NCBI RefSeq assembly: GCF_001194135.2
Contig: NC_068984.1
Span: 51,792,269-51,856,268, forward strand
DNA: 64,000 bases
Source: Octopus bimaculoides
Lineage: Eukaryota
Direction of reading: 5' to 3'
Of this stretch, positions 5,597 through 64,000 are shown in pieces. The notes under the pieces were generated by a model. That model ran no database searches, had not been told where the DNA came from, and worked only from the letters and a program-made list of their open reading frames with translations. Positions within the stretch are counted from its first letter, which is position 1, and the number at the start of each line of letters is the position of its first letter. The position numbers and the translations under genes are program-made.

Positions 5597-7790
5597 TGTA
5601 GCGTACACTCGAGTGAAATACCTTCCCCCTTTATTATATATACGAGCATTCGAACGCAGCAGATAACAACTAGCCTTTGGCCGCTATTTGGACCCCGTTG
5701 TGTCAACTACTCTGATTGGATGGTATTGGCGCAATTTGCCTCTTACTCTATCGCGCTAATATGCAGCGTATAACCAGTCGGAGCCTCGGATCTTTCTGAA
5801 TTGACGGGAACCACTTGTTTTCTTAACGAAACACTTTCAAACTTGGGATACTGGTAGAATGTGTCATATAAAACAACTTTTTCTCTTATTCTTCTTAACA
5901 AAAAATTGTACATCGCAAGTTATTTCATGTTAAAGTTGTCGTATTTCTGTAATTTCAACCAATCACTGACGTCTATTCAGCTGAATACAGTTACTGCTGT
6001 TTTTGTAAACAATCATTTTTGCCGGTGTCAAGATCGTTATTCCCTAGTAAGGGTTTACGGTTTTAGGGTTAGGGTTCGGGTTTTAGAGTTAGGGTTAGGG
6101 TTGGGGTTATGAGTTATAGGGTTTTAGGCTTAGGGTTATGAGTTATAGGGTTTTAGGGTTAGGGTTAGGGTTACGGTTATGAATGAGGTTATGGCAAAAA
6201 TAATCATAAGCCTAACCCTACAACTAACCCTAACTCTAAAACACGAACCCTAACCCTAAAACCCTTGTAAAAAGTTTGATAGTTGGTTGTCATAGAGACT
6301 TTAGTCTCTCTCTATCACCTTTCAACAGCATTAATATATGAAGAGACATTAGAACAATTAACAACATATTAAAACGGTTTTATTTATGACTATTATGCTT
6401 GGTTTCACAATTACTGTCATTCTGCTTAGCAGCCGCTGATTAGGTTGTAGTTTGGTAATGGAAGGTTAAGGGCTTCGTGGAGGAGCGAGGTGTTGCTACG
6501 TAGGTCTCAGCTCAACTCGCTTAACAAAGTGAAACTCTCTCTATAAGTACGAGTTTTACTACGCATGCGCAACTCGAGGGGCTTCCGGTGGTGCAGTCCT
6601 CTGCGCATGCGCAGAATAGTACTTCTTCAATGGTGGCCTATAATTTCGCGCCACTACACCCTAAAGTTAAAACCAGTACAAACGCACGAACGATGTCATA
6701 AATAACAGTACCACGGATAGTTGTTGTTGACAAAGAACGGCACTAATTTTATTCAGGGGAAAAGATCCCATGATACCGTTAGAACATGTTGTTTACATTC
6801 CACGGCAGTAATTGTTTTCACCTCAATAGACGTCAGTGATTGGTTGAAATTACCGAAATACAAACATTTTTTACATGAAATAACTTCGAATACAAAATTT
6901 TTATCTGTTCTATAACACAAAATATACAAGTATACGAAGTTTGAAAGTGTTTCGGTACCAAAAACACTACATAAAACACAAACGAAAAGTGGTGTCCGTC
7001 AATTCAGAAAGATCCGGAGCCTCTAAATAAGATCACGTGAGACAGCCTGTTCTCAATCCCGTTTGAGCTTACTGTTCCTTATGAAAACTCACCTTCTCCT
7101 CGTCTCGAGGTCTTTGGTTCCAGACCTTTTAAGGTTTAGTCACTGACCACATAAGACACAGGCAGTTCCAGCGACAACACCAGACGACCCGTCCAACAGC
7201 ATGAAGGCAATCTCCGTCTTCGTCGCCACCATCATCTTCTTAACGTCGTCAACATAATTTCTCTACGTACACAGCTCAAGCAACACTGCACAGGTTCCAA
7301 CATAGCACTGTTTGTGAATTACTTCACCATGGTTAACATATACAACCTGCGAGAACTCCTGTACAAGTGACCCAGGTAGCAGCATTACAGCCACAACTTC
7401 GTACATGTACCGCAACTCCGGCTCTGCATCATCGCCGCAACTTCTTTATACAGTATTTCAATTACCGTGTTCAATTGAATACCAATTGGTATCTCTCATT
7501 CTTGTGTCTATGAACATTCGTCTAACTTCTCATTATAGACTTTTTCACTGTCTCTTTCTTCATTGTTATTCTTATATGCAACACACGCATACACCCATGC
7601 CTATACTCACGAACACTTTGTTCTCATGACGGCCCGTCATTTATTCTGTATACATGACGCACACACACACAAGTTAGCATATCAATAAAACCTCTTCTCT
7701 CAAACATTCTACTCGGTTGTGTCTTTCTCTTTTCCAACTGGCACATGACCATCTAAACGAGGAATGAATATGCCTTACTCATCATAACTT
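5597..7790 (+). mobile_element. Diverged LTR of the same superfamily, split by a TIR element
   Basis: 5660-5780 and 7024-7750 match LTR segments of 853-1896. Right end and TSD not resolved. Confidence 0.55.
5788..7015. mobile_element. Non-autonomous Merlin-like DNA transposon with internal telomere-like arrays
   Basis: TIRs GGATCTTTCTGAATTGACGG / CCGTCAATTCAGAAAGATCC, 8-bp TSD GGAGCCTC, degenerate ttaggg/ccctaa runs at 6045-6265. Confidence 0.8.
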
Positions 7791-28069: not shown

Positions 28070-28259
28070 AGAGAGAGAGAGAGAGAGAGAGTATTCCTCT
28101 GGATACATCATAATCAATTTTAGTAGGGTAATTTTTCAGCTAAAGGACTCAACAGATATATCTGTACATATGCGTACCAAATGACTTCACATGCATACTC
28201 ATAGCAATGCAATTTTATTGAATTTAAGTAATATTATTCTTTGTTTCTTTCTCTTTCAG

Positions 28260-28283
28260 CACAAGAAGAGATTGTTTGTAAAG
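28260..28283 (+). CDS. Exon 4, 24-nt micro-exon AQEEIVCK (phase 1-1)
   Basis: ttgtttctttctctttcag|CACAAGAAGAGATTGTTTGTAAAG|gtaagttaaatgtatatttatt. Confidence 0.8.
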
Positions 28284-33124: not shown

Positions 33125-33470
33125 TGTTTCTAAAATGGACACATGGTCTGAAATCTGGATTAGTCAATTAAATCAATGCTGGTACTTGACTGGTATTTAT
33201 TTTATTGACTCTGGAAGGATGAAAAGCAAAGCAAAATTAAATTCAACAGGATTTGAACTCATGTAGAAATGAAAAGCCAAGTTGGGCCCAGTTCTAACTC
33301 AGGATGTACAAGGAGCAAGACCTTTACTTTCACCCTCTTGCTTTTCTCCTACCTCCATCATTTTCAATTTAAAGAAGTGGTAACAGATTTCGAAGATTCA
33401 GAATATTTCTTTGCCTTTATCCTTTGTAAAATGTTTCTTATTTTAAATAACCCATTTATATTCTTTCCAG

Positions 33471-33532
33471 AACATTTTTCTTCACTTTCCTGCCAAATAG
33501 AGTTTGCGCAGTCTAAAAAATGCTTTGTTCAG
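33471..33532 (+). CDS. Exon 5 EHFSSLSCQIEFAQSKKCFVQ (phase 1-0)
   Basis: atattctttccag acceptor, CAG|gtttgt donor, open frame, phase matches neighbours. Confidence 0.8.
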
Positions 33533-34432
33533 GTTTGTATAAATTACAACCATACACACTTTGAAAAATCACCTGTGCTTCTGAATGACAAAAACCTGAC
33601 AGAGTTTATTAAATTCTCAGTTATAAACGACTTAAAATCAAGTAAGACTTTTTAAAGTAATATTAATGAAATTTTAATCATTTGTTGTGTGTATTTGTAT
33701 GTGTGTGTGTTTCTTTCAGGCATCATCATCATCATCATCATCATCATTAAGCATCCGTTTTCCATGCTGGCATGGGTAGGATGATTTCACTGGCACTGGT
33801 AAGCCAGAGAGCTGCACCAGGCTTCAGTTTGTTTTGGCTTGGTTTCTCTAGTTGGATGCTCTTCCTAACACCAACCACTCCACAGAGCATACTGGGTGTT
33901 TTTTTACATGTCACCAGCATGGGTGCCTTTTATGTGTCACCAACACTGACCACGACTATGATTTCACTTGGCTTGACATGTCTCCTCAAGCACGGCAAAT
34001 CACCAAAGGTCTCGATCACTTGTCATCGCCTCTGTGAGACTCAAGATCTAACAATCGTGCTTCACCACCTTGTCCCACATCTTCCTGCGTGTTGCCAGTT
34101 AAAAAAATAAGTAAGACTGATGCATTGTATGGTGCAGTATTTATATTTTGACAATTATTTGAATGTTTCATCCTATGGTTCATTGACCAGATTTGACCAT
34201 GTTCCTGTTTAACGTCTACTTTTCTACACTTGCATGGATTGGACAGATTTTATTGGGAAAGATTTTCTACAGCTGGATACCCTTCTTGTCATGAACCCTC
34301 ATTTGTTTCTAAGAAAGATAATATTTCACTTTGGCCAAACATGTTTTTGCAGAATATTGGAAATGAATGACACTGCTTGTGTGACAGTAGTACTCATATA
34401 CAAATACCATATGGTATTAAGACAAAGAAATA

Positions 34433-50394: not shown

Positions 50395-50929
50395 ACACAT
50401 GTAAAATAATGTTTCAGTCTTTATTAATTTTATTTTATTGAACACTTTTGTTTTGTTTCTTAGACCACTACAATTTATAACAACCCAACTATGATGGAAA
50501 GGGATACCGCTGATAAGTTGCAAAATAGAACATCTAATTCAAAGGAGCATAAGCTTGTGAAGTTAATTGATACTGAAAACAATTTAATTGATATCATCAT
50601 GGAAAACAAGGATAACATTCAAGTGAGTATATTAATTCAAACCCTGGAGAATTTAAGATTTTAATGAAAATTTAGATTCATTCATCATCATCATCATCAT
50701 CGTTTAACATCCGTTTTCCATGCTAGCATGGGCTGAACAGTTTGACCAGAGTCTGGGAAGCCAGGAGGCTGCACCAGGTTCCAGCTGGATGCCCTTCCTA
50801 ACGCCAACTACTCCATGAGTGTAGTGGATGCTTTTTACGTGCCACCGGCACAGGGGCCAGAGGAGGCTGGCAACAGCCATGATCGGTAGGTGCTTTTTAC
50901 ATGCCACATACATACATATATATATGTAT

Positions 50930-51479: not shown

Positions 51480-53131
51480 TTATATATATATATATATACA
51501 TACTGCTCTACTCTTCGAAACGCCTGTGTTAGAATGGAGGCAGCTGATGAAGGAGATGTTCTCTATGTGGCCTGTGTGTTTTCTGTACTCGTTTATCATT
51601 TTGTCTATGCTTTGTTTGCAATGTCCTGTACCCAGATAAGCATCTATATATACAGGTAGATGTAAGTACGTACATACATGTACATATATATGCATATACT
51701 CATTTATCATTTGTATTATATATATATATATATCTTATATCTGCTTTCCATGCTGGCATGGGTTGGACAGTTTGACATGGAGCTGGTTTGCAGGGAGTTG
51801 TCCAGACTCCAATCCAACTGTCTGTTATGGCCTGGTTTCTATGGCTGGATGCTTTTCCTAATACCCACCACTTAACAGGGTGTGCTCGGTGTGTCATTGG
51901 TGAATGGTTCTATCATTTGAATATATAGAAATGAATTCCCTTAACCATAGCCATCTGACTGTTGAAAATGAACTAGGAACATTTACCACGTCACATGTAA
52001 TATGTTCACCAGACTATCAGATGTTGTTACACATCACTGGTCACAATGCACTTTTGCATTGTTTTAGCTTTTGAATGATGCCACCCTGCTGACTAGGTGA
52101 GCAGGCCCTAATCGAAGGTGAACTGGAGCAATGTGAAATGAAGTGTTTTGCTCAAGAACACAATGTGTCACCCAGTCAGGGAATCAAACCCACAATCTAG
52201 CAATTGTGAGTGTAACAGCCTAACCACTAGGCTACATGCCTTCGTGGGAACATATATATAAGAAGGAAATAGCAACATATAACTAAAGGTTCAATATAGT
52301 CTTTATCAAACTTTTTGCAAATAAGGGTTATTTTAACTATTCAAAGCATAGTCTTCTTTCTTCCACAACTGCCTACCACTGGCAATTTAGTCACATAACT
52401 CAGCTTGAAGTAAATGTTATTGCCTTCATGCATTCATAGATCAGTCATAATAAACAAAACTATGATGGAAGGCGTTCTAAAGGTAATAATCCTATCTTTT
52501 GTATATCAAGGATTACATTGTTCAATGCAACCTTTATTTAAAATGGTAAGAGACAATTTAGCTGCTAAATTCAGCAGGTTGAGCAACCATGTCTCAGGAC
52601 CTAGGTGAACAAAATTGCCTATAAACAATTCTGTCTCTTCCACTTCGTCTGTCGTTCAGTTTTTTTACAGTTTCTTATCTTCAGATTAGGTGGCTGAAGT
52701 AACAAGCATAGTTCATCAATTGTGTTTAGGAATTGTGTGAGAGGGTCATAGAAGAGAAATTGTTTTTTTTTTCAGCCACATGCATACATATCAACGCTTT
52801 ATCATATATACATAGCAATTTATCTATCACATATACATATATACATATCAACACCTTCGTATCATTACGATGAGATTCTGGATTCACAAATTCACATGGA
52901 AAAATGTGAAAAATAAGAAAAATGTAGAACATCAAAATGTGAAATAAAAGTAAGCTGTATTTGCTGATGAAAGTACAATATTTTTAAATGAAGTTTTTCT
53001 CTTATTAAGACCACTACTTAATTTGACTGAAATAGCTTAATTCTTTACATGTTCGTTATTAGTTTTATCATGAAACTGCATATTTTATTTTTTAACATAC
53101 CTTTGTAATCTTTCTCTTAATTTCTTTCTAG

Positions 53132-53194
53132 ATTTTTGTAGATGTATTAAATAATATAACAATGAAAAATTGTTGGACAAACTTGAACAATGAG
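53132..53194 (+). CDS. Exon 13, GAIN-A helix IFVDVLNNITMKNCWTNLNNE (phase 0-0)
   Basis: tttctcttaatttctttctag acceptor, GAG|gtaaaa donor; resembles the latrophilin-type VxxVxNLL...WxxL helix. Confidence 0.8.
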
Positions 53195-55475: not shown

Positions 55476-55581
55476 AAAAAGTTGTATCCTACAAAGGTAA
55501 TGAAAGTTGTTGACAAATTCCTGGAGAATATAAATACAACAAATTCCTCTGAACAAATCAAAATTGAAAAAGAAAATATAG
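55476..55581 (+). CDS. Exon 14 KKLYPTKVMKVVDKFLENINTTNSSEQIKIEKENI (phase 0-1)
   Basis: tatttatttcag acceptor, ATAG|gtaaga donor; last GAIN-A helix, then the ENI start of GAIN-B. Confidence 0.85.
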
Positions 55582-57431: not shown

Positions 57432-57539
57432 TTTTCCAATTTGATGAATTAAAGAATAAAACCATTTCGGTAAATCTTGGTTCTGATGAATCCCTCCAAG
57501 TTCATATTGATGAGTCAGTAATTAAGAATATATCTTCAG
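57432..57539 (+). CDS. Exon 15 VFQFDELKNKTISVNLGSDESLQVHIDESVIKNISS (phase 1-1)
   Basis: tatttatccttatag acceptor, TCAG|gtaaag donor; alternating beta-strand pattern. Confidence 0.85.
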
Positions 57540-57719: not shown

Positions 57720-58438
57720 AATTTATTCAATAAAATCGCCATTTGCTTCAACCACGGCTTCCAGACGACTTCAAAATATCTTGCAACTCTCCTGGATTGT
57801 CTCCTTGTCTTAGTTGGTGAATGCTACCATACTCTTGCCTTCAGTTCATCTTTGGTGTTACAAGGAGTTTTGTTAGTTTCTCGCTCAGCTGTACCCCACA
57901 CATAATAATCAAGGGGGTTGCAGTTTGGGGAGTTAGGTGGCCAGATGTTAGGGGTGATGTGGTTGCTGAAATTGTCTGACAGCTATGACTGGGTTCTCCT
58001 GCTTGTGTAGCATGGTGCAAAGTCCTGTTGCTAACATAGGGTCTTCCAGCAGCCACCCTCTTGACCCAGCACTACCTCCTCTAGGCTTTATGTAGGCCTC
58101 TGTGTTGCATCTGAGGCTGTGTGGGAAGATGAATGTAGGCATAATGTCACCATCACTAATGGTCCCTCCAAACACCATGATATTGACTGGATGTTTGATT
58201 TTTATCACTCTTGGTACATGACCTCAGATTACACTGTCCTCAGATTGTCACCCAAACTCTCTGAAATGTTTGTATTGGAGCTTCCAGTGCAACTGCCAAG
58301 CAGCACAGCAAGTCATTTCCAAATTTCTGGCTGAGTGAATTGCGTCATGGTGCTGTTTTTCTCACAGTTGACAAAATAAAAAAAAACATGCCTGACATTA
58401 AAGATATACAATGACAATTTACCCATCGCACCCTGTAT
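57720..58438 (-). mobile_element. Degenerate Tc1/mariner (maT/DD37D-like) transposase remnant
   Basis: MVFGG..SDGDIMPTFIF, plus broken QDSAPCH and WPPNSPDCNPLD-like motifs; TA-cagggtg terminus at the right. Confidence 0.7.
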
Positions 58439-59014: not shown

Positions 59015-59087
59015 ATGACCCCATATTTTACAGTGTTGTCCTCTACAAATCATTAACATACATCATACAAATGACTGAAGCTAACCG
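59015..59087 (+). CDS. Exon 16 DDPIFYSVVLYKSLTYIIQMTEAN(R) (phase 1-2)
   Basis: Long pyrimidine tract plus cag, CG|gtgaga donor; VVLYKSL resembles the GAIN-B xxLYKNL motif. Confidence 0.85.
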
Positions 59088-61210
59088 GTGAGACCACTTG
59101 AGTTATTTCTCATTTTATCTCTTAGTTGTCATAAGTTCAAACCTCAGCATGGCTATTGCATTGTACTCCGAGACAAAAGTATACCACTCTATTTGCCTCA
59201 TTTTGTCCAGAGCAAATCAACAATGGAATAAATGCACCAGTCATATAGCGACGAACAAATTTACAGGAAAAAAAGGGGGGAAGTTTTCACTCAGGTTACA
59301 ATGGAAAATAGATATAAAACTGTTTAAAAATGAAACATAGTATTTAATAAATATACAGTAATTTTTTTTATCTTTCTCATATAATTATTAAGACAGGCAT
59401 CCTCTATGTTACAGAAGTTTTGCATTCATGAAAATCTTGTAATCTGGAATTCTGTAATGCAAAATCTAATTCTCTATTGACTTCCAAGTTATATAACACT
59501 GAAGACAGTGGGAAAATAGAATTCATACTTACAGAATTCCAAATTATAGCAAGATTTTATAGGAATGCAATGCTTCCATGTTGCAGGAGATGCCTTACAA
59601 TAAATATTGTTAAGATTAAGGAATGCAGAGAGCCAGAGTCAGGTGCCAAAGTTAACTAAATTGCATTAATTAGTTTTGTCCTCTGTAGTTTCAAGTTCAA
59701 ATTCTTAGGATTGATTTGACTTTAATTCTGGTAATCTAGAAAAGATCACCTATATCTTACGAAATTGCTGACATGCTCTGAAAAGAAACCCTTATATAAT
59801 GTGGAATACTGATTAGGTAGAGGAAAACTACCAGTGAGCTCTGTCATTTTACTACATTTGTACTACTTAAAACATGAAATTTTCACTGATCTCACCACTA
59901 AAAATATCTTGGGCTTTAGGTCCATAATGCTAGTATAAGAAATAATTGTTGACTGAGACAATATAGAAGCAACTGTGAACATTCAATTTAATAGGTCAGT
60001 ATGAGAATCAGTTCTAGAGTGGACTTAGTCTTTTTAATAAAATAAACAGCTGTAATATATTGTAGTTGATTTAGTTAACTGTAGTAAAGTGGATGCTAAC
60101 ATACTTGATGTAATTTACAAAACATATTAATTAGTTAAAAATGAAATGCATTGGAAAGTGAGCTTGCTCTATAGTGCTTAAGATCTATGGATGCTTTAAA
60201 ATGTTATTTCAGTTAATTAAAATTTCTTGTTTTATAACCTACTTTACTATTAAATTTTCGATGTCAACAAATTTGATTTTGTGTGTTTATTACATGAGTC
60301 ATAAAGTTGTGATGAATTAAGAACACTGAAATTGATACATGTCAGTATTATGTTAAGAACCTAACATCCTGTAGTTGAAAACACCTGGATTAGTGTTTAG
60401 TGTTAATATAAATGTACCAAAATTGATTTTTAAAAAAATTATCCAGATGATGGGTTGTGTCCATAAACTTTGTGGTCCTTTCTAGGTAGAGTTTCATTAG
60501 AGAACAGCAAACATTATAAATTGAAGGATTTTAACTGTGTTGTTCATTAACAGAGAGGATGTAGTGTTGCAAGATTGTTTCCTTCTAAAACAAAGAGAGT
60601 GTATTATTGCAACATTCCTTTTTTATATATGCAGGGTGCTGGTGCCACGTAAAAAGCATCCATGCCGGTGCCATATAAAAGCACCCAAGCTGGTGCTACA
60701 TGAAAGCATTCAGTACACTCTGTAAAGTGGTTGATATTAGGAAGGACATCCAGCTGTAGAAACCACGACAAAACAGACAGGGAACCTAGGCAGCTCCTGT
60801 CAAACTGTCCAAACCATGCTAGCATGGAAAATGGACGTTAAATGAGATGGTGATGATGGTGATGATGATGATGATGCAGCAGCAGCAGGGAGGGTATGGA
60901 GTTGCAAAACTGTGTTCTTGATGTATGCAGGGAAAGTGCAATGCTGTAAGCCTTTTTTTATGCAGGAACTGTTATAGGGCTTTCAAAAATAGAAATAATA
61001 CATTTCTAAATATCTCAGAGAGATTTATGCAGTAGTGATGCGATAAAGTAGTTATGTGCTGTCAACTTAATGTGATAGTCCTATGAAGGGAATAATACTA
61101 CTGCTATTTAGCCCTAGGAAGCAGCACCGCTTCCTGTCGGCCTTGACACATTTCCAGTGTTTTTATGTTTACAAGGGGGAGACAAGCACCTCCACTTAGC
61201 TAAGCCTGCA

Positions 61211-62411: not shown

Positions 62412-62526
62412 GACAAATGAAAACACAAATCACAAAGATCTTCTTTCAGATATTCTAAGTTTCACAATTCACAAAGCAAATTCAAAAAATCTCATAAAAA
62501 ACATAACTTATCGTCTGAACCATAAG
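62412..62526 (+). CDS. Exon 17 (R)TNENTNHKDLLSDILSFTIHKANSKNLIKNITYRLNHK (phase 2-0)
   Basis: tgtttctattttag acceptor, AAG|gtaagt donor; SDILSFTI and ITYRLNH resemble the GAIN-B strands immediately before the GPS. Confidence 0.85.
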
Positions 62527-63041
62527 GTAAGTTTATCATTTAATCCATTAGCATTCAGATTATCCTATCTAATGTAGTGCTTTTTCATTCACATTGTTTT
62601 TAATTAATCATGCTTCGAAATTTTGATGATGTGACTATACTTTTAGAGTGACATTGAAGGGTATGTGTGATAGGCTTTGGGCTGGATATGGTTTAAATGC
62701 TAAAAGGTTCAGTGCTTATATAAGATGGAATGTATCAAAAAGTGTTTAGCCAATCCAATGTTACCTCCAGTGGTCAGTTTGTGATGACTCACCATCTTTC
62801 CTATTTGTTCATTTGTTCAGGACAGTTTTTCACTTGTATTCTAGTTTATATTTTGATGTTATCTACCTGAATTTCTTTTTACCTTTTAATCCCTTGTGTT
62901 AATTTTTAATATGGTTTCTTAGTTTAAAATACTGGTTCTGTTCAAAGTATCTTAGTTTTCATTATTAAATTACTTTCAATTTTCTTTATGGCCATATATA
63001 CAAAGGAAATTAAAACAATGATAATATTATTGTATTTACAG

Positions 63042-63065
63042 ACTAAGATACAATGCAAACTCTGA
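63042..63065 (+). CDS. Candidate exon 18 TKIQCKL* (terminal exon or broken GPS exon)
   Basis: attattgtatttacag acceptor; phase 0 gives TKIQCKL then TGA; AATAAA at 63248-63253. Confidence 0.45.
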   Translation, partial: TKIQCKL

Positions 63066-64000
63066 ACAATCAGAATAAGTGAAAAATTGAAAAAGTAATA
63101 TAAAAATTTAAAATATAGGTGCAGGCATCTCTTTCTCCAGAAACAGAGGCATAGAGTGAAGGCCTAGCAACTAATTTTTGTAGAAAAACTCGTATGCTGC
63201 TGAAGTTGTCTAAGGATGGCTTGATGTATCCTACAACACAAACTGGAAATAAAAATTGAGAAAGAATATAATCAACAAAAATGTATATTTTTTATTAAAA
63301 TGTTCAAACTTCTTTCATAGGGCTGTGTTCAAAGACCTCAGCTGCAGATTTCCCATTCTGTAACCCTGCCATATTAGACAGCTGTGAATTATAGTTTGAA
63401 ATTAGAAGTGATAGTTGTCTTAAAGAGATATATTGTTTGCTCTGCTTTAGCTTGAGTTGGTTGTGTTCAATCCTTTATGTTGTCAATAGTTTAACTAAAT
63501 GACACAAGTAAACACATTTGTAGTATGTTTACCTCTGGTGTGAGGTAGAAAGATAGGATAAGTGATTTATAGAAAGACTGTTGATTACTAGTAACTACAA
63601 TGGACATTTTGGTAAACAAAAAAGATAGGATAAGTGATTTATAGAAGAACTTGATTATTAATAACTACAATAGACATTGTGGTAAGCAGTAATCAGTAAC
63701 TTCTTTCTGAATGAATGACTCATCTTCCCTCTTAATCTACAGAATATCTAGTTGTAACCCAATCCTAACAACTAATGTTGTTTAACACTTTAGCATTCAG
63801 ATTATTCTGTCAAATGTAATGCTTCTTTATTCAAATTGGTTTGAATTAATCATGCATTATCTCATAACTTTGAGATTTTGATGATGTGATTGTTTATTTA
63901 TAGAAAAACACTGTAATGTAGGTGTGAGAGGTCAGGTCTGGCAAGTTTGAACAGAAAACAAATAGAATAATTTGGCTTGATATGGTGAGTTTGAATGCTA

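What the first reader, a model, noticed from the sequence alone, without database searches (positions are those of the whole stretch)
63042..63253. GAIN domain appears to stop at the GPS tryptophan (TKIQCKL-TGA): secreted GAIN-only protein, broken GPS, or stop recoding
Seen: after exon 17 (...ITYRLNHK, phase 0) a good acceptor at 63042 reads T-K-I-Q-C-K-L-stop, with AATAAA about 185 nt later. Known: in GAIN domains the strand ending in H is followed within about 6-12 residues by the GPS motif C-x-F/W-W, so this TGA falls on the conserved Trp. Inferred options: (a) a truncated, secreted, 7TM-less GAIN ectodomain or decoy; (b) a 1-nt deletion or assembly error, since restoring one G gives CKLWNNQN before a weak aa|gtgaaa donor; (c) A-to-I editing of UGA to UGI (Trp), plausible only because coleoids recode extensively; (d) the real GPS exon lies beyond 64000. 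An optional 15-nt exon DSFSL (62821-62835, good acceptor, weak donor) would give a latrophilin-like H-to-C spacing of 11.
Basis: partly seen in the sequence, partly recalled or inferred. Interest (0 to 1): 0.7.

Follow-up and report, generated by a model that had tools for sequence, protein, structure and literature searches.

The report
Intronic look-alike of a GPS micro-exon
The apparent stop codon inside this octopus adhesion-receptor domain lies in an intron; the real next exon sits 530 bases beyond the window and continues into a normal cleavage motif and seven-helix receptor, so the gene is ordinary.

Summary
The sequence is as described: exon ...ITYRLNHK ends at 62526, an AG at 63040-41 opens T-K-I-Q-C-K-L-TGA (TGA 63063-65), and AATAAA follows at 63248. 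The window is Octopus bimaculoides chromosome CM046604.1. The gene is annotated as 'adhesion G protein-coupled receptor L4' (XP_014769618.1, XP_052823013.1). All three O. bimaculoides protein models, and the O. vulgaris, O. sinensis and Argonauta hians orthologues, join ...LNHK directly to KLTSNTKCAYWSSSPT. That peptide is encoded by a 47-nt micro-exon at window-equivalent 64530-64576, 530 nt past the window end. The rest of a canonical GPS (CxCNHLT|SF; Pfam GPS E=4e-13) and a 7tm_2 domain (E=6e-35) follow. The TGA is identical in three independent assemblies, so it is not an assembly error. Both candidate donors are no better than random GTs. No local RNA duplex supports editing. AATAAA occurs every 790 nt here. 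One curiosity remains. In O. bimaculoides, the acceptor flank at 63042 resembles that of the true micro-exon (p about 3e-4). With one G restored the element matches the true exon's phase and W-W spacing. It may be a decayed tandem duplicate. Interest is low.

The parts
50464..50622 (+). Coding exon 11 (residues 266-318, TTTIYNN...KDNIQ), helical part of the GAIN region
   Evidence: Phase-consistent chain built by hand. 100% match to XP_052823013.1.
53132..53194 (+). Coding exon 12 (IFVDVLNNITMKNCWTNLNNE)
55476..55581 (+). Coding exon 13 (KKLYPTK...EKENI + G)
57432..57539 (+). Coding exon 14 (FQFDELK...KNISS), start of the beta-sandwich part
59015..59087 (+). Coding exon 15 (DPIFYSVVLYKSLTYIIQMTEAN + CG)
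62412..62526 (+). Last coding exon inside the window.
   Evidence: (100% over 38 aa to P0001)
62527..64000 (+). First 1474 nt of the 2003-nt intron that separates exon 16 from the true GPS micro-exon (window-equivalent 64530-64576, outside the window)
   Evidence: L001 coordinate + 5833 = window coordinate.
63042..63078 (+). The candidate exon TKIQCKL-TGA. It is intronic and unused in all gene models. It may be a decayed duplicate of the GPS micro-exon.
63063..63065 (+). In-frame TGA, identical in O. bimaculoides, O. vulgaris and O. sinensis
63248..63253 (+). AATAAA hexamer, of no demonstrated significance
   Evidence: 81 copies on this strand of the window. Retained in O. vulgaris.
62821..62835 (+). 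Not used in any model; donor score -5.2.
62539..62675 (+). Copy of an interspersed (SINE-like) repeat in the same intron
   Evidence: self-BLAST of the window
63771..64000 (+). Second copy of the same repeat, running to the window end

Best explanation
Positions 63042-63078 are ordinary intron sequence of an annotated Octopus bimaculoides adhesion GPCR gene (RefSeq name 'adhesion G protein-coupled receptor L4'). The mature mRNA splices exon 16 (end 62526) across a 2003-nt intron to a 47-nt micro-exon. That exon lies 530 nt beyond the window (window-equivalent 64530-64576; phase 0 to 2). It encodes K-L-T-S-N-T-K-C-A-Y-W-S-S-S-P plus the first two bases (AC) of the Thr codon that the next exon completes. 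The next exon supplies DLIGEWKTDGC...CVCNHLT|SFAILM, and the 7TM exons follow. The GAIN domain is therefore complete and canonical. The apparent stop at the GPS tryptophan comes from the window ending inside the intron, combined with a short in-phase reading that happens to show C-x-x-TGA. Shown here: the splice pattern of the gene models, the location of the true exon, conservation of the TGA across three species, and the poor splice signals. Inferred: that the element is not spliced at any appreciable level. No RNA data were available.
For: An index-free HMMER search with the 38-aa exon peptide found P0001 at 100% identity, residues 436-473 of 830. P0001 is XP_052823013.1; isoform X1 is XP_014769618.1. 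Both read ...ITYRLNHKKLTSNTKCAYWSSSPTDLIGEWKTDGCFRTSLNEFYTECVCNHLTSFAILM.... The 2015 model A0A0L8HT54 reads the same. Pfam on P0001 gives GPS 480-523 at E=3.8e-13 and 7tm_2 534-769 at E=5.5e-35. The genomic locus L001 is identical to the window with an offset of 5833. Residues 474-830 have no match in the window. The micro-exon is at L001 58697-58743 and the following exon starts at 59763. Orthologues in O. vulgaris, O. sinensis and Argonauta hians have the same junction. C481, W484, W495, C500, C512, C514 and H516-L517-T518 are invariant. The pseudo-exon with its TGA is 37/37 identical in three assemblies. Donor scores are -3.2 (63078) and -1.8 (63094), the 64th and 78th percentile of all GTs in the locus. 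Eight real donors score +1.7 to +8.1. The acceptor pyrimidine count is the lowest of nine. Chance expectation is given.
Against: No transcript data could be examined, so rare use of 63042 cannot be excluded. Gene models are predictions, although six models from several pipelines and four species agree. Between O. bimaculoides and O. vulgaris the element sits in a 50-nt run of perfect identity. However, the intron is 93% identical overall and true exons only 94-96%, so this says nothing either way. In O. bimaculoides the acceptor flank is unusually similar to that of the true micro-exon. This suggests the site may not be a purely random piece of intron.
Confidence: 0.85

Rival explanations
1. 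The element is a decayed tandem duplicate of the GPS micro-exon, the relic of a former pair of alternative exons. It was disabled by a 1-nt deletion (TGG to TG-) and by loss of its donor before the O. bimaculoides / O. vulgaris split. This concerns origin and is compatible with the element being unused today.
For: The 36 nt upstream of the two acceptors are 24/36 identical in the same register, including TTAAAACAAT ending exactly 22 nt before the exon start in both. Only 1 of 2679 other YAG sites in the locus reaches this. The local alignment score is 19, against 8.4 +/- 1.9 for 21,618 control windows from four loci; 7 controls reach it, p about 3e-4. With one G restored the element is 38 nt, phase 0 to 2 like the true exon. 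It would give W + 10 residues + W exactly as in the true sequence. The same gene carries three tandemly duplicated micro-exon units about 3.07 kb apart at its 5' end, so micro-exon duplication has happened here.
Against: The same test in O. vulgaris is not significant: score 11, with 186 of 1926 controls as good. O. sinensis also scores 11. BLAST with the true exon +/-150 nt does not report the site at E<=1, while chance hits elsewhere score higher, for example window 6863-6898 at 29/36. Similarity is confined to the acceptor flank and the first 20 nt or so. In the best DNA alignment the Cys and Trp/TGA codons are not in register, and four gaps are needed to align them. The 3' half is at chance level. 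Window and flank sizes were chosen after seeing the match.
Confidence: 0.3
2. 63042 is a rarely used alternative terminal or poison exon. Its inclusion gives a transcript ending ...NHKTKIQCKL*. That transcript would either be degraded or yield a 7TM-less ectodomain cut before the GPS strands.
For: A usable though weak acceptor in phase 0, and an AATAAA 183 nt downstream that is retained in O. vulgaris. 7TM-less transcript variants are widely predicted for adhesion GPCRs (PMC6667449; PMC11039983; bioRxiv 10.1101/2023.01.11.521585).
Against: No model in any of four species uses it. AATAAA is expected by chance. The acceptor is the weakest of those compared. The GPS motif is an integral part of the GAIN fold (PMC3321182). 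By inference, a product lacking the GPS strands from the first Cys onward would be unlikely to fold.
Confidence: 0.07
3. A-to-I editing turns UGA into UGG, so the element serves as an alternative GPS exon.
For: Coleoids recode extensively (general knowledge). If the second donor, AAAAA|gtaata at 63094/63095, were used, the exon would be 53 nt, phase 0 to 2, and would read TKIQCKLWTIRISEKLK + K-DLIGEW... in frame (sequence).
Against: It runs into a stop 17 codons into the next exon (sequence). Donor 63094 scores -1.8. RNA folding of 62985-63145 gives z = +0.62, with 143 of 200 shuffles folding as well, so there is no local duplex for ADAR. The edited A has a 5' G, the least favoured ADAR neighbour (established knowledge). 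No model uses the exon.
Confidence: 0.01
4. The stop is an assembly or sequencing error, a missing G.
For: Restoring one G gives CKLWNNQN and the right phase.
Against: CTCTGAACAATCAG is identical in GCA_001194135.2 (O. bimaculoides), GCA_951406725.2 (O. vulgaris) and GCA_006345805.1 (O. sinensis).
Confidence: 0.01

Closest known systems
Adhesion (class B2) GPCR with GAIN domain and GPS autoproteolysis motif; RefSeq XP_014769618.1 / XP_052823013.1 'adhesion G protein-coupled receptor L4' of Octopus bimaculoides
   Same: The window's exons are 100% identical to residues 1-473 of these models. The models carry a Pfam GPS motif with C-x-x-W, W-x-x-G-C and C-x-C-x-H-L-T|S-F, directly followed by a 7tm_2 domain.
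   Different: Nothing about the gene differs from what is annotated. The 'L4' name is an automatic best-hit label; Pfam finds no EGF or other N-terminal domain, and orthology to vertebrate ADGRL4 was not tested.
Intronic pseudo-exons and decayed copies of tandemly duplicated (mutually exclusive) exons
   Same: A short exon-sized stretch in the intron just upstream of a real exon. It has the same entry phase, a similar acceptor flank and a similar encoded motif, but is disabled by a stop or frameshift and by weak splice sites.
   Different: Homology to the true exon is only suggestive: significant in one species, not in two others, and not in codon register.
7TM-less transcript variants of adhesion GPCRs (PMC6667449, PMC11039983)
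   Different: Known variants typically retain a whole GAIN domain or end in other domains. Here the product would be cut inside the GAIN fold, and there is no transcript evidence.

Membership tests
Adhesion GPCR (the gene as a whole) | Secretin-like seven-transmembrane domain | tested here: met
   Pfam 7tm_2 PF00002, residues 534-769 of P0001, E=5.5e-35. It is encoded outside the window.
Adhesion GPCR (the gene as a whole) | GPS motif immediately N-terminal to the 7TM, with four Cys, two Trp and the H-L-S/T cleavage triad | tested here: met
   Pfam GPS PF01825, residues 480-523, E=3.8e-13. C481, W484, W495, C500, C512, C514, H516, L517 and T518 are invariant in four species.
Adhesion GPCR (the gene as a whole) | GAIN fold (helical subdomain A plus beta-sandwich subdomain B enclosing the GPS strands) | tested here: inconclusive
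   AlphaFold2 on a 4-sequence alignment gave mean pLDDT 33, which is unusable, so no fold search was run. Pfam GAIN and PDB phmmer gave no hit on the 220-aa region. The predicted secondary-structure order (helices 264-358, strands 386-526) and the presence of the GPS are consistent with GAIN but do not prove it.
Adhesion GPCR (the gene as a whole) | Autoproteolysis at HL|T actually occurs | not testable with these tools
   Needs protein biochemistry.
Functional GPS-encoding exon (the element 63042-63078) | Open reading frame through C-x-[FY]-W | tested here: not met
   TGA at 63063-65 in three species.
Functional GPS-encoding exon (the element 63042-63078) | Competent donor site in a phase compatible with the next exon | tested here: not met
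   As it stands in the genome, the 63078 donor gives phase 1, which is incompatible, and scores -3.2. The 63094 donor gives phase 2 but scores -1.8 and needs the stop decoded as Trp.
Functional GPS-encoding exon (the element 63042-63078) | Included in transcripts or gene models | tested here: not met
   Absent from six protein models of four species. RNA reads were not available.
ADAR recoding site | Edited adenosine lies in a stable RNA duplex | tested here: not met
   Strand folding on 62985-63145: MFE -15.6 kcal/mol, z = +0.62. Long-range pairing was not tested.
Tandem exon duplicate of the GPS micro-exon | Sequence similarity to the true exon and flanks beyond chance | tested here: inconclusive
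   O. bimaculoides p about 3e-4. O. vulgaris and O. sinensis not significant. Not reported by BLAST at E<=1.

The most novel reading that the evidence does not exclude
The element is the remnant of a tandemly duplicated GPS micro-exon. An ancestral octopod adhesion GPCR could then have chosen between two alternative versions of the first GPS strand (C-x-x-W region), with one copy dying by a 1-nt deletion. It might still be spliced at a low level as a poison exon that down-regulates the receptor.
Probability: 0.3. Interest if true: 0.25.

Novelty: not a real feature. Interest (0 to 1): 0.08.

Why it matters
It matters mainly as a caution. A window that ends inside an intron, together with a short in-phase reading that mimics the expected motif, produced an apparent truncated or recoded GAIN domain. 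In fact the gene is an ordinary, already annotated adhesion GPCR. Two small positive points remain. The first Cys and Trp of the GPS motif are encoded by a 47-nt micro-exon in octopods. The gene also shows tandem micro-exon duplication at its 5' end. A dead duplicate of the GPS micro-exon is therefore a reasonable, cheaply testable idea, though of limited general interest.

Tried and rejected
1. Word-index protein searches with the 50-aa (exon 16 + candidate exon) and 220-aa (six spliced exons) peptides found nothing. This first suggested an unannotated or orphan gene. It was a tool miss: the index-free HMMER search with the single 38-aa exon found the RefSeq protein at once.
2. A Pfam scan of about 9,300 aa of + strand stop-free segments (28.7-63.4 kb) found nothing. 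Pfam and PDB phmmer on the 220-aa spliced peptide gave nothing relevant.
The same rule applies to structure prediction.
4. AlphaFold2 of the full protein with four orthologues gave pLDDT 33, so no fold search was run.
5. A possible extra exon at 52440-52482 was rejected because its phase is incompatible and it is absent from the protein.
6. A motif scan of the whole window for C-x-C-x-H-L-[ST] and W-x-x-G-C found no GPS exon in the window.
7. The Argonauta hians intron is too diverged to align. It shares only a 16-nt 'TTACAGACTAAGA' match (E=0.1) with no C-x-x-W after it.
8. Conservation between O. bimaculoides and O. vulgaris cannot separate exon from intron: 93% against 94-96%.
9. The look-up of encoding contigs on P0001 found no record. 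It worked on isoform X1.

Full report
OBSERVATION. The exon 62412-62526 ends ...ATA ACT TAT CGT CTG AAC CAT AAG|gtaagt (ITYRLNHK, phase 0). After 'ttgtatttacag' the reading is ACT AAG ATA CAA TGC AAA CTC TGA (63042-63065). One added G would give CKLWNNQN before AA|gtgaaa. AATAAA lies at 63248-63253. The window is AT-rich eukaryotic DNA (GC about 0.36) with microsatellites and N gaps, and 31% of it is self-similar repeat.

IS IT MORE THAN CHANCE? No. Of 375 acceptor-like sites in the window read in phase 0, 17 show a Cys three codons before the first stop, and 5 of those stops are TGA. At least 16 candidate acceptors lie in the 1.47 kb after exon 16, so about 0.2 such readings are expected. AATAAA occurs 81 times on this strand, once per 790 nt. 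The 63042 acceptor has 11 of 18 pyrimidines, the lowest of the nine acceptors compared. The two possible donors (63078, 63094) score -3.2 and -1.8. These are the 64th and 78th percentile of all GT dinucleotides in the locus. Eight verified donors of the gene score +1.7 to +8.1.

BUILDING THE GENE. Working backwards by phase, I chained these exons: 50464-50622, 53132-53194, 55476-55581, 57432-57539, 59015-59087 and 62412-62526. Pfam and PDB sequence searches on the spliced 220-aa peptide gave nothing. Two word-index protein searches also found nothing. An index-free HMMER search with the 38-aa exon peptide alone then found P0001, 830 aa, 100% identical over residues 436-473.

WHAT THE GENE IS. 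P0001 is XP_052823013.1, 'adhesion G protein-coupled receptor L4 isoform X2 [Octopus bimaculoides]'. Isoform X1 is XP_014769618.1, 856 aa. P0001 contains my exon chain exactly. After ...ITYRLNHK it continues KLTSNTKCAYWSSSPTDLIGEWKTDGCFRTSLNEFYTECVCNHLTSFAILMSHH..., followed by seven hydrophobic helices. Pfam gives GPS at 480-523 (E=3.8e-13) and 7tm_2 at 534-769 (E=5.5e-35). The two isoforms differ only in the cytoplasmic tail. The independent 2015 model A0A0L8HT54 has the same junction.

WHERE THE REAL NEXT EXON IS. The genomic locus of isoform X1 is L001 (GCA_001194135.2, CM046604.1:51798102-51898200). It is identical to the window with an offset of 5833. The window is therefore CM046604.1:51,792,269-51,856,268. 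Residues 474-830 have no match in the window.

- The peptide KLTSNTKCAYWSSSP(T) is encoded by a 47-nt micro-exon at L001 58697-58743. Its boundaries are tttttcag|AAA CTA ... CCA AC|gtaagc, phase 0 to 2. This equals window-equivalent 64530-64576, 530 nt beyond the window end.
- The next exon starts at L001 59763 (ctctttgtag|G GAT CTT ...). It encodes DLIGEWKTDGC...CVCNHLTSFAILMSHHQV.
- The intron after exon 16 is 2003 nt, and 63042 lies 516 nt into it.

ORTHOLOGUES. O. vulgaris (CAI9721574.1), O. sinensis (XP_029634696.1) and Argonauta hians (GAB1597453.1) all read ...LNHK|KL(T/A)(S/L)NTKC(A/V)YWSS.... C481, W484, W495, C500, C512, C514 and H516-L517-T518 are invariant.

THE RIVAL READINGS OF THE TGA.
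- Assembly error. In the orthologous introns of O. vulgaris (L002) and O. sinensis (L004) the element is 37/37 identical, including CTCTGAAC with a single G. Three independent assemblies rule out an assembly error. If a G was lost, it was lost before these species split.
- Editing. A second donor at 63094/63095 would give a 53-nt, phase-2 exon reading CKLWTIRISEKLKK-DLIGEW. That donor is poor. The RNA around the site has no stable structure (z = +0.62). The target A follows a G, the least favoured ADAR context (general knowledge).
- Truncated secreted GAIN. No model uses the exon. Because the GPS strands are an integral part of the GAIN fold (PMC3321182), a product cut at the first GPS cysteine is unlikely to fold (inference). 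7TM-less variants as such are well known (PMC6667449, PMC11039983).
- Conservation. This cannot help. The intron is 93% identical between the two octopuses and real exons only 94-96%.

A RESIDUAL CURIOSITY. The true next exon is itself a micro-exon covering the first Cys and Trp of the GPS. The candidate resembles it in several ways.
- The 36 nt before the two acceptors are 24/36 identical in register, with TTAAAACAAT ending 22 nt before the exon start in both. Only 1 of 2679 other YAG sites in the locus does as well.
- A local alignment scores 19 against 8.4 +/- 1.9 in 21,618 control windows, of which 7 reach it.
- With one G restored, the candidate has the same phases (0 to 2) and the same W-to-W spacing as the true exon.
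- The gene also has three tandemly duplicated micro-exon units at its 5' end. These are exons 2-4, about 3.07 kb apart, with near-identical flanks.

Several results count against homology.
- The same tests are not significant in O. vulgaris or O. sinensis.
- BLAST does not report the pair at E<=1, while unrelated AT-rich sites score higher.
- The similarity stops about 20 nt into the exon.
- In the best DNA alignment the Cys and Trp/TGA codons are out of register.

I rate a decayed tandem duplicate at about 0.3. Either way the element is not part of the annotated mRNA.

GAIN IDENTITY. The GPS and 7TM are demonstrated. The GAIN fold itself could not be confirmed structurally, because AlphaFold gave pLDDT 33 with only four sequences. 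The inference rests on the GPS being part of a GAIN domain in all studied adhesion GPCRs (PMC3321182). It also rests on the predicted order of helices then strands before the GPS.

VERDICT. The gene is an ordinary, already annotated adhesion GPCR with a canonical GPS. The 'stop at the GPS tryptophan' is not a real feature of the protein.

Noticed in passing
window 22118-22135, 25195-25215, 28259-28282: Coding exons 2-4 of the same gene are micro-exons of about 18-24 nt (AQSSCL, DDEPNCN, AQEEIVCK; each carries one Cys). They are spaced about 3.07 kb apart and have near-identical flanks, including the donor GGTAAGTTAAATAT. They look like tandemly duplicated micro-exon units.
   Followed up: partly
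L001 58697-58743 (window-equivalent 64530-64576, outside the window): In octopods the first Cys and first Trp of the GPS motif are encoded by a separate 47-nt micro-exon. It is conserved in O. vulgaris, O. sinensis and Argonauta hians.
   Followed up: yes
window 6863-6898: A 36-nt stretch upstream of the gene matches the acceptor and 5' half of the true GPS micro-exon at 29/36 (BLAST E=0.001). It could be chance in AT-rich DNA or a hint of a small dispersed repeat.
   Followed up: no
window 62539-62675 and 63771-64000: Two copies of an interspersed SINE-like repeat lie on either side of the finding. Overall 31% of the window matches elsewhere in the window.
   Followed up: partly
window 57827-58223, minus strand: Two overlapping open frames in the exon 14-15 intron look like a Tc1/mariner transposase remnant (...NPLDYYVWG...). 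Pfam gives no hit at E<=0.01.
   Followed up: partly
window 33470-33650: The 2015 UniProt model A0A0L8HT67 (107 aa) reads through the exon-5 donor (...INDLKSSKTF), and A0A0L8HT54 (427 aa) covers only the 3' half. The first annotation therefore split this gene in two.
   Followed up: partly
tools: The word-index homology search failed to return XP_052823013.1, although that protein contains most of both queries at 100% identity. The index-free HMMER search found it with a 38-aa query.
   Followed up: no
P0001 residues 1-265 (window 15834-49099): The Cys-rich N-terminal region of the receptor has no Pfam domain. The 'L4' (ELTD1-like) name is therefore an automatic label, with no EGF domains detected.
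   Followed up: no
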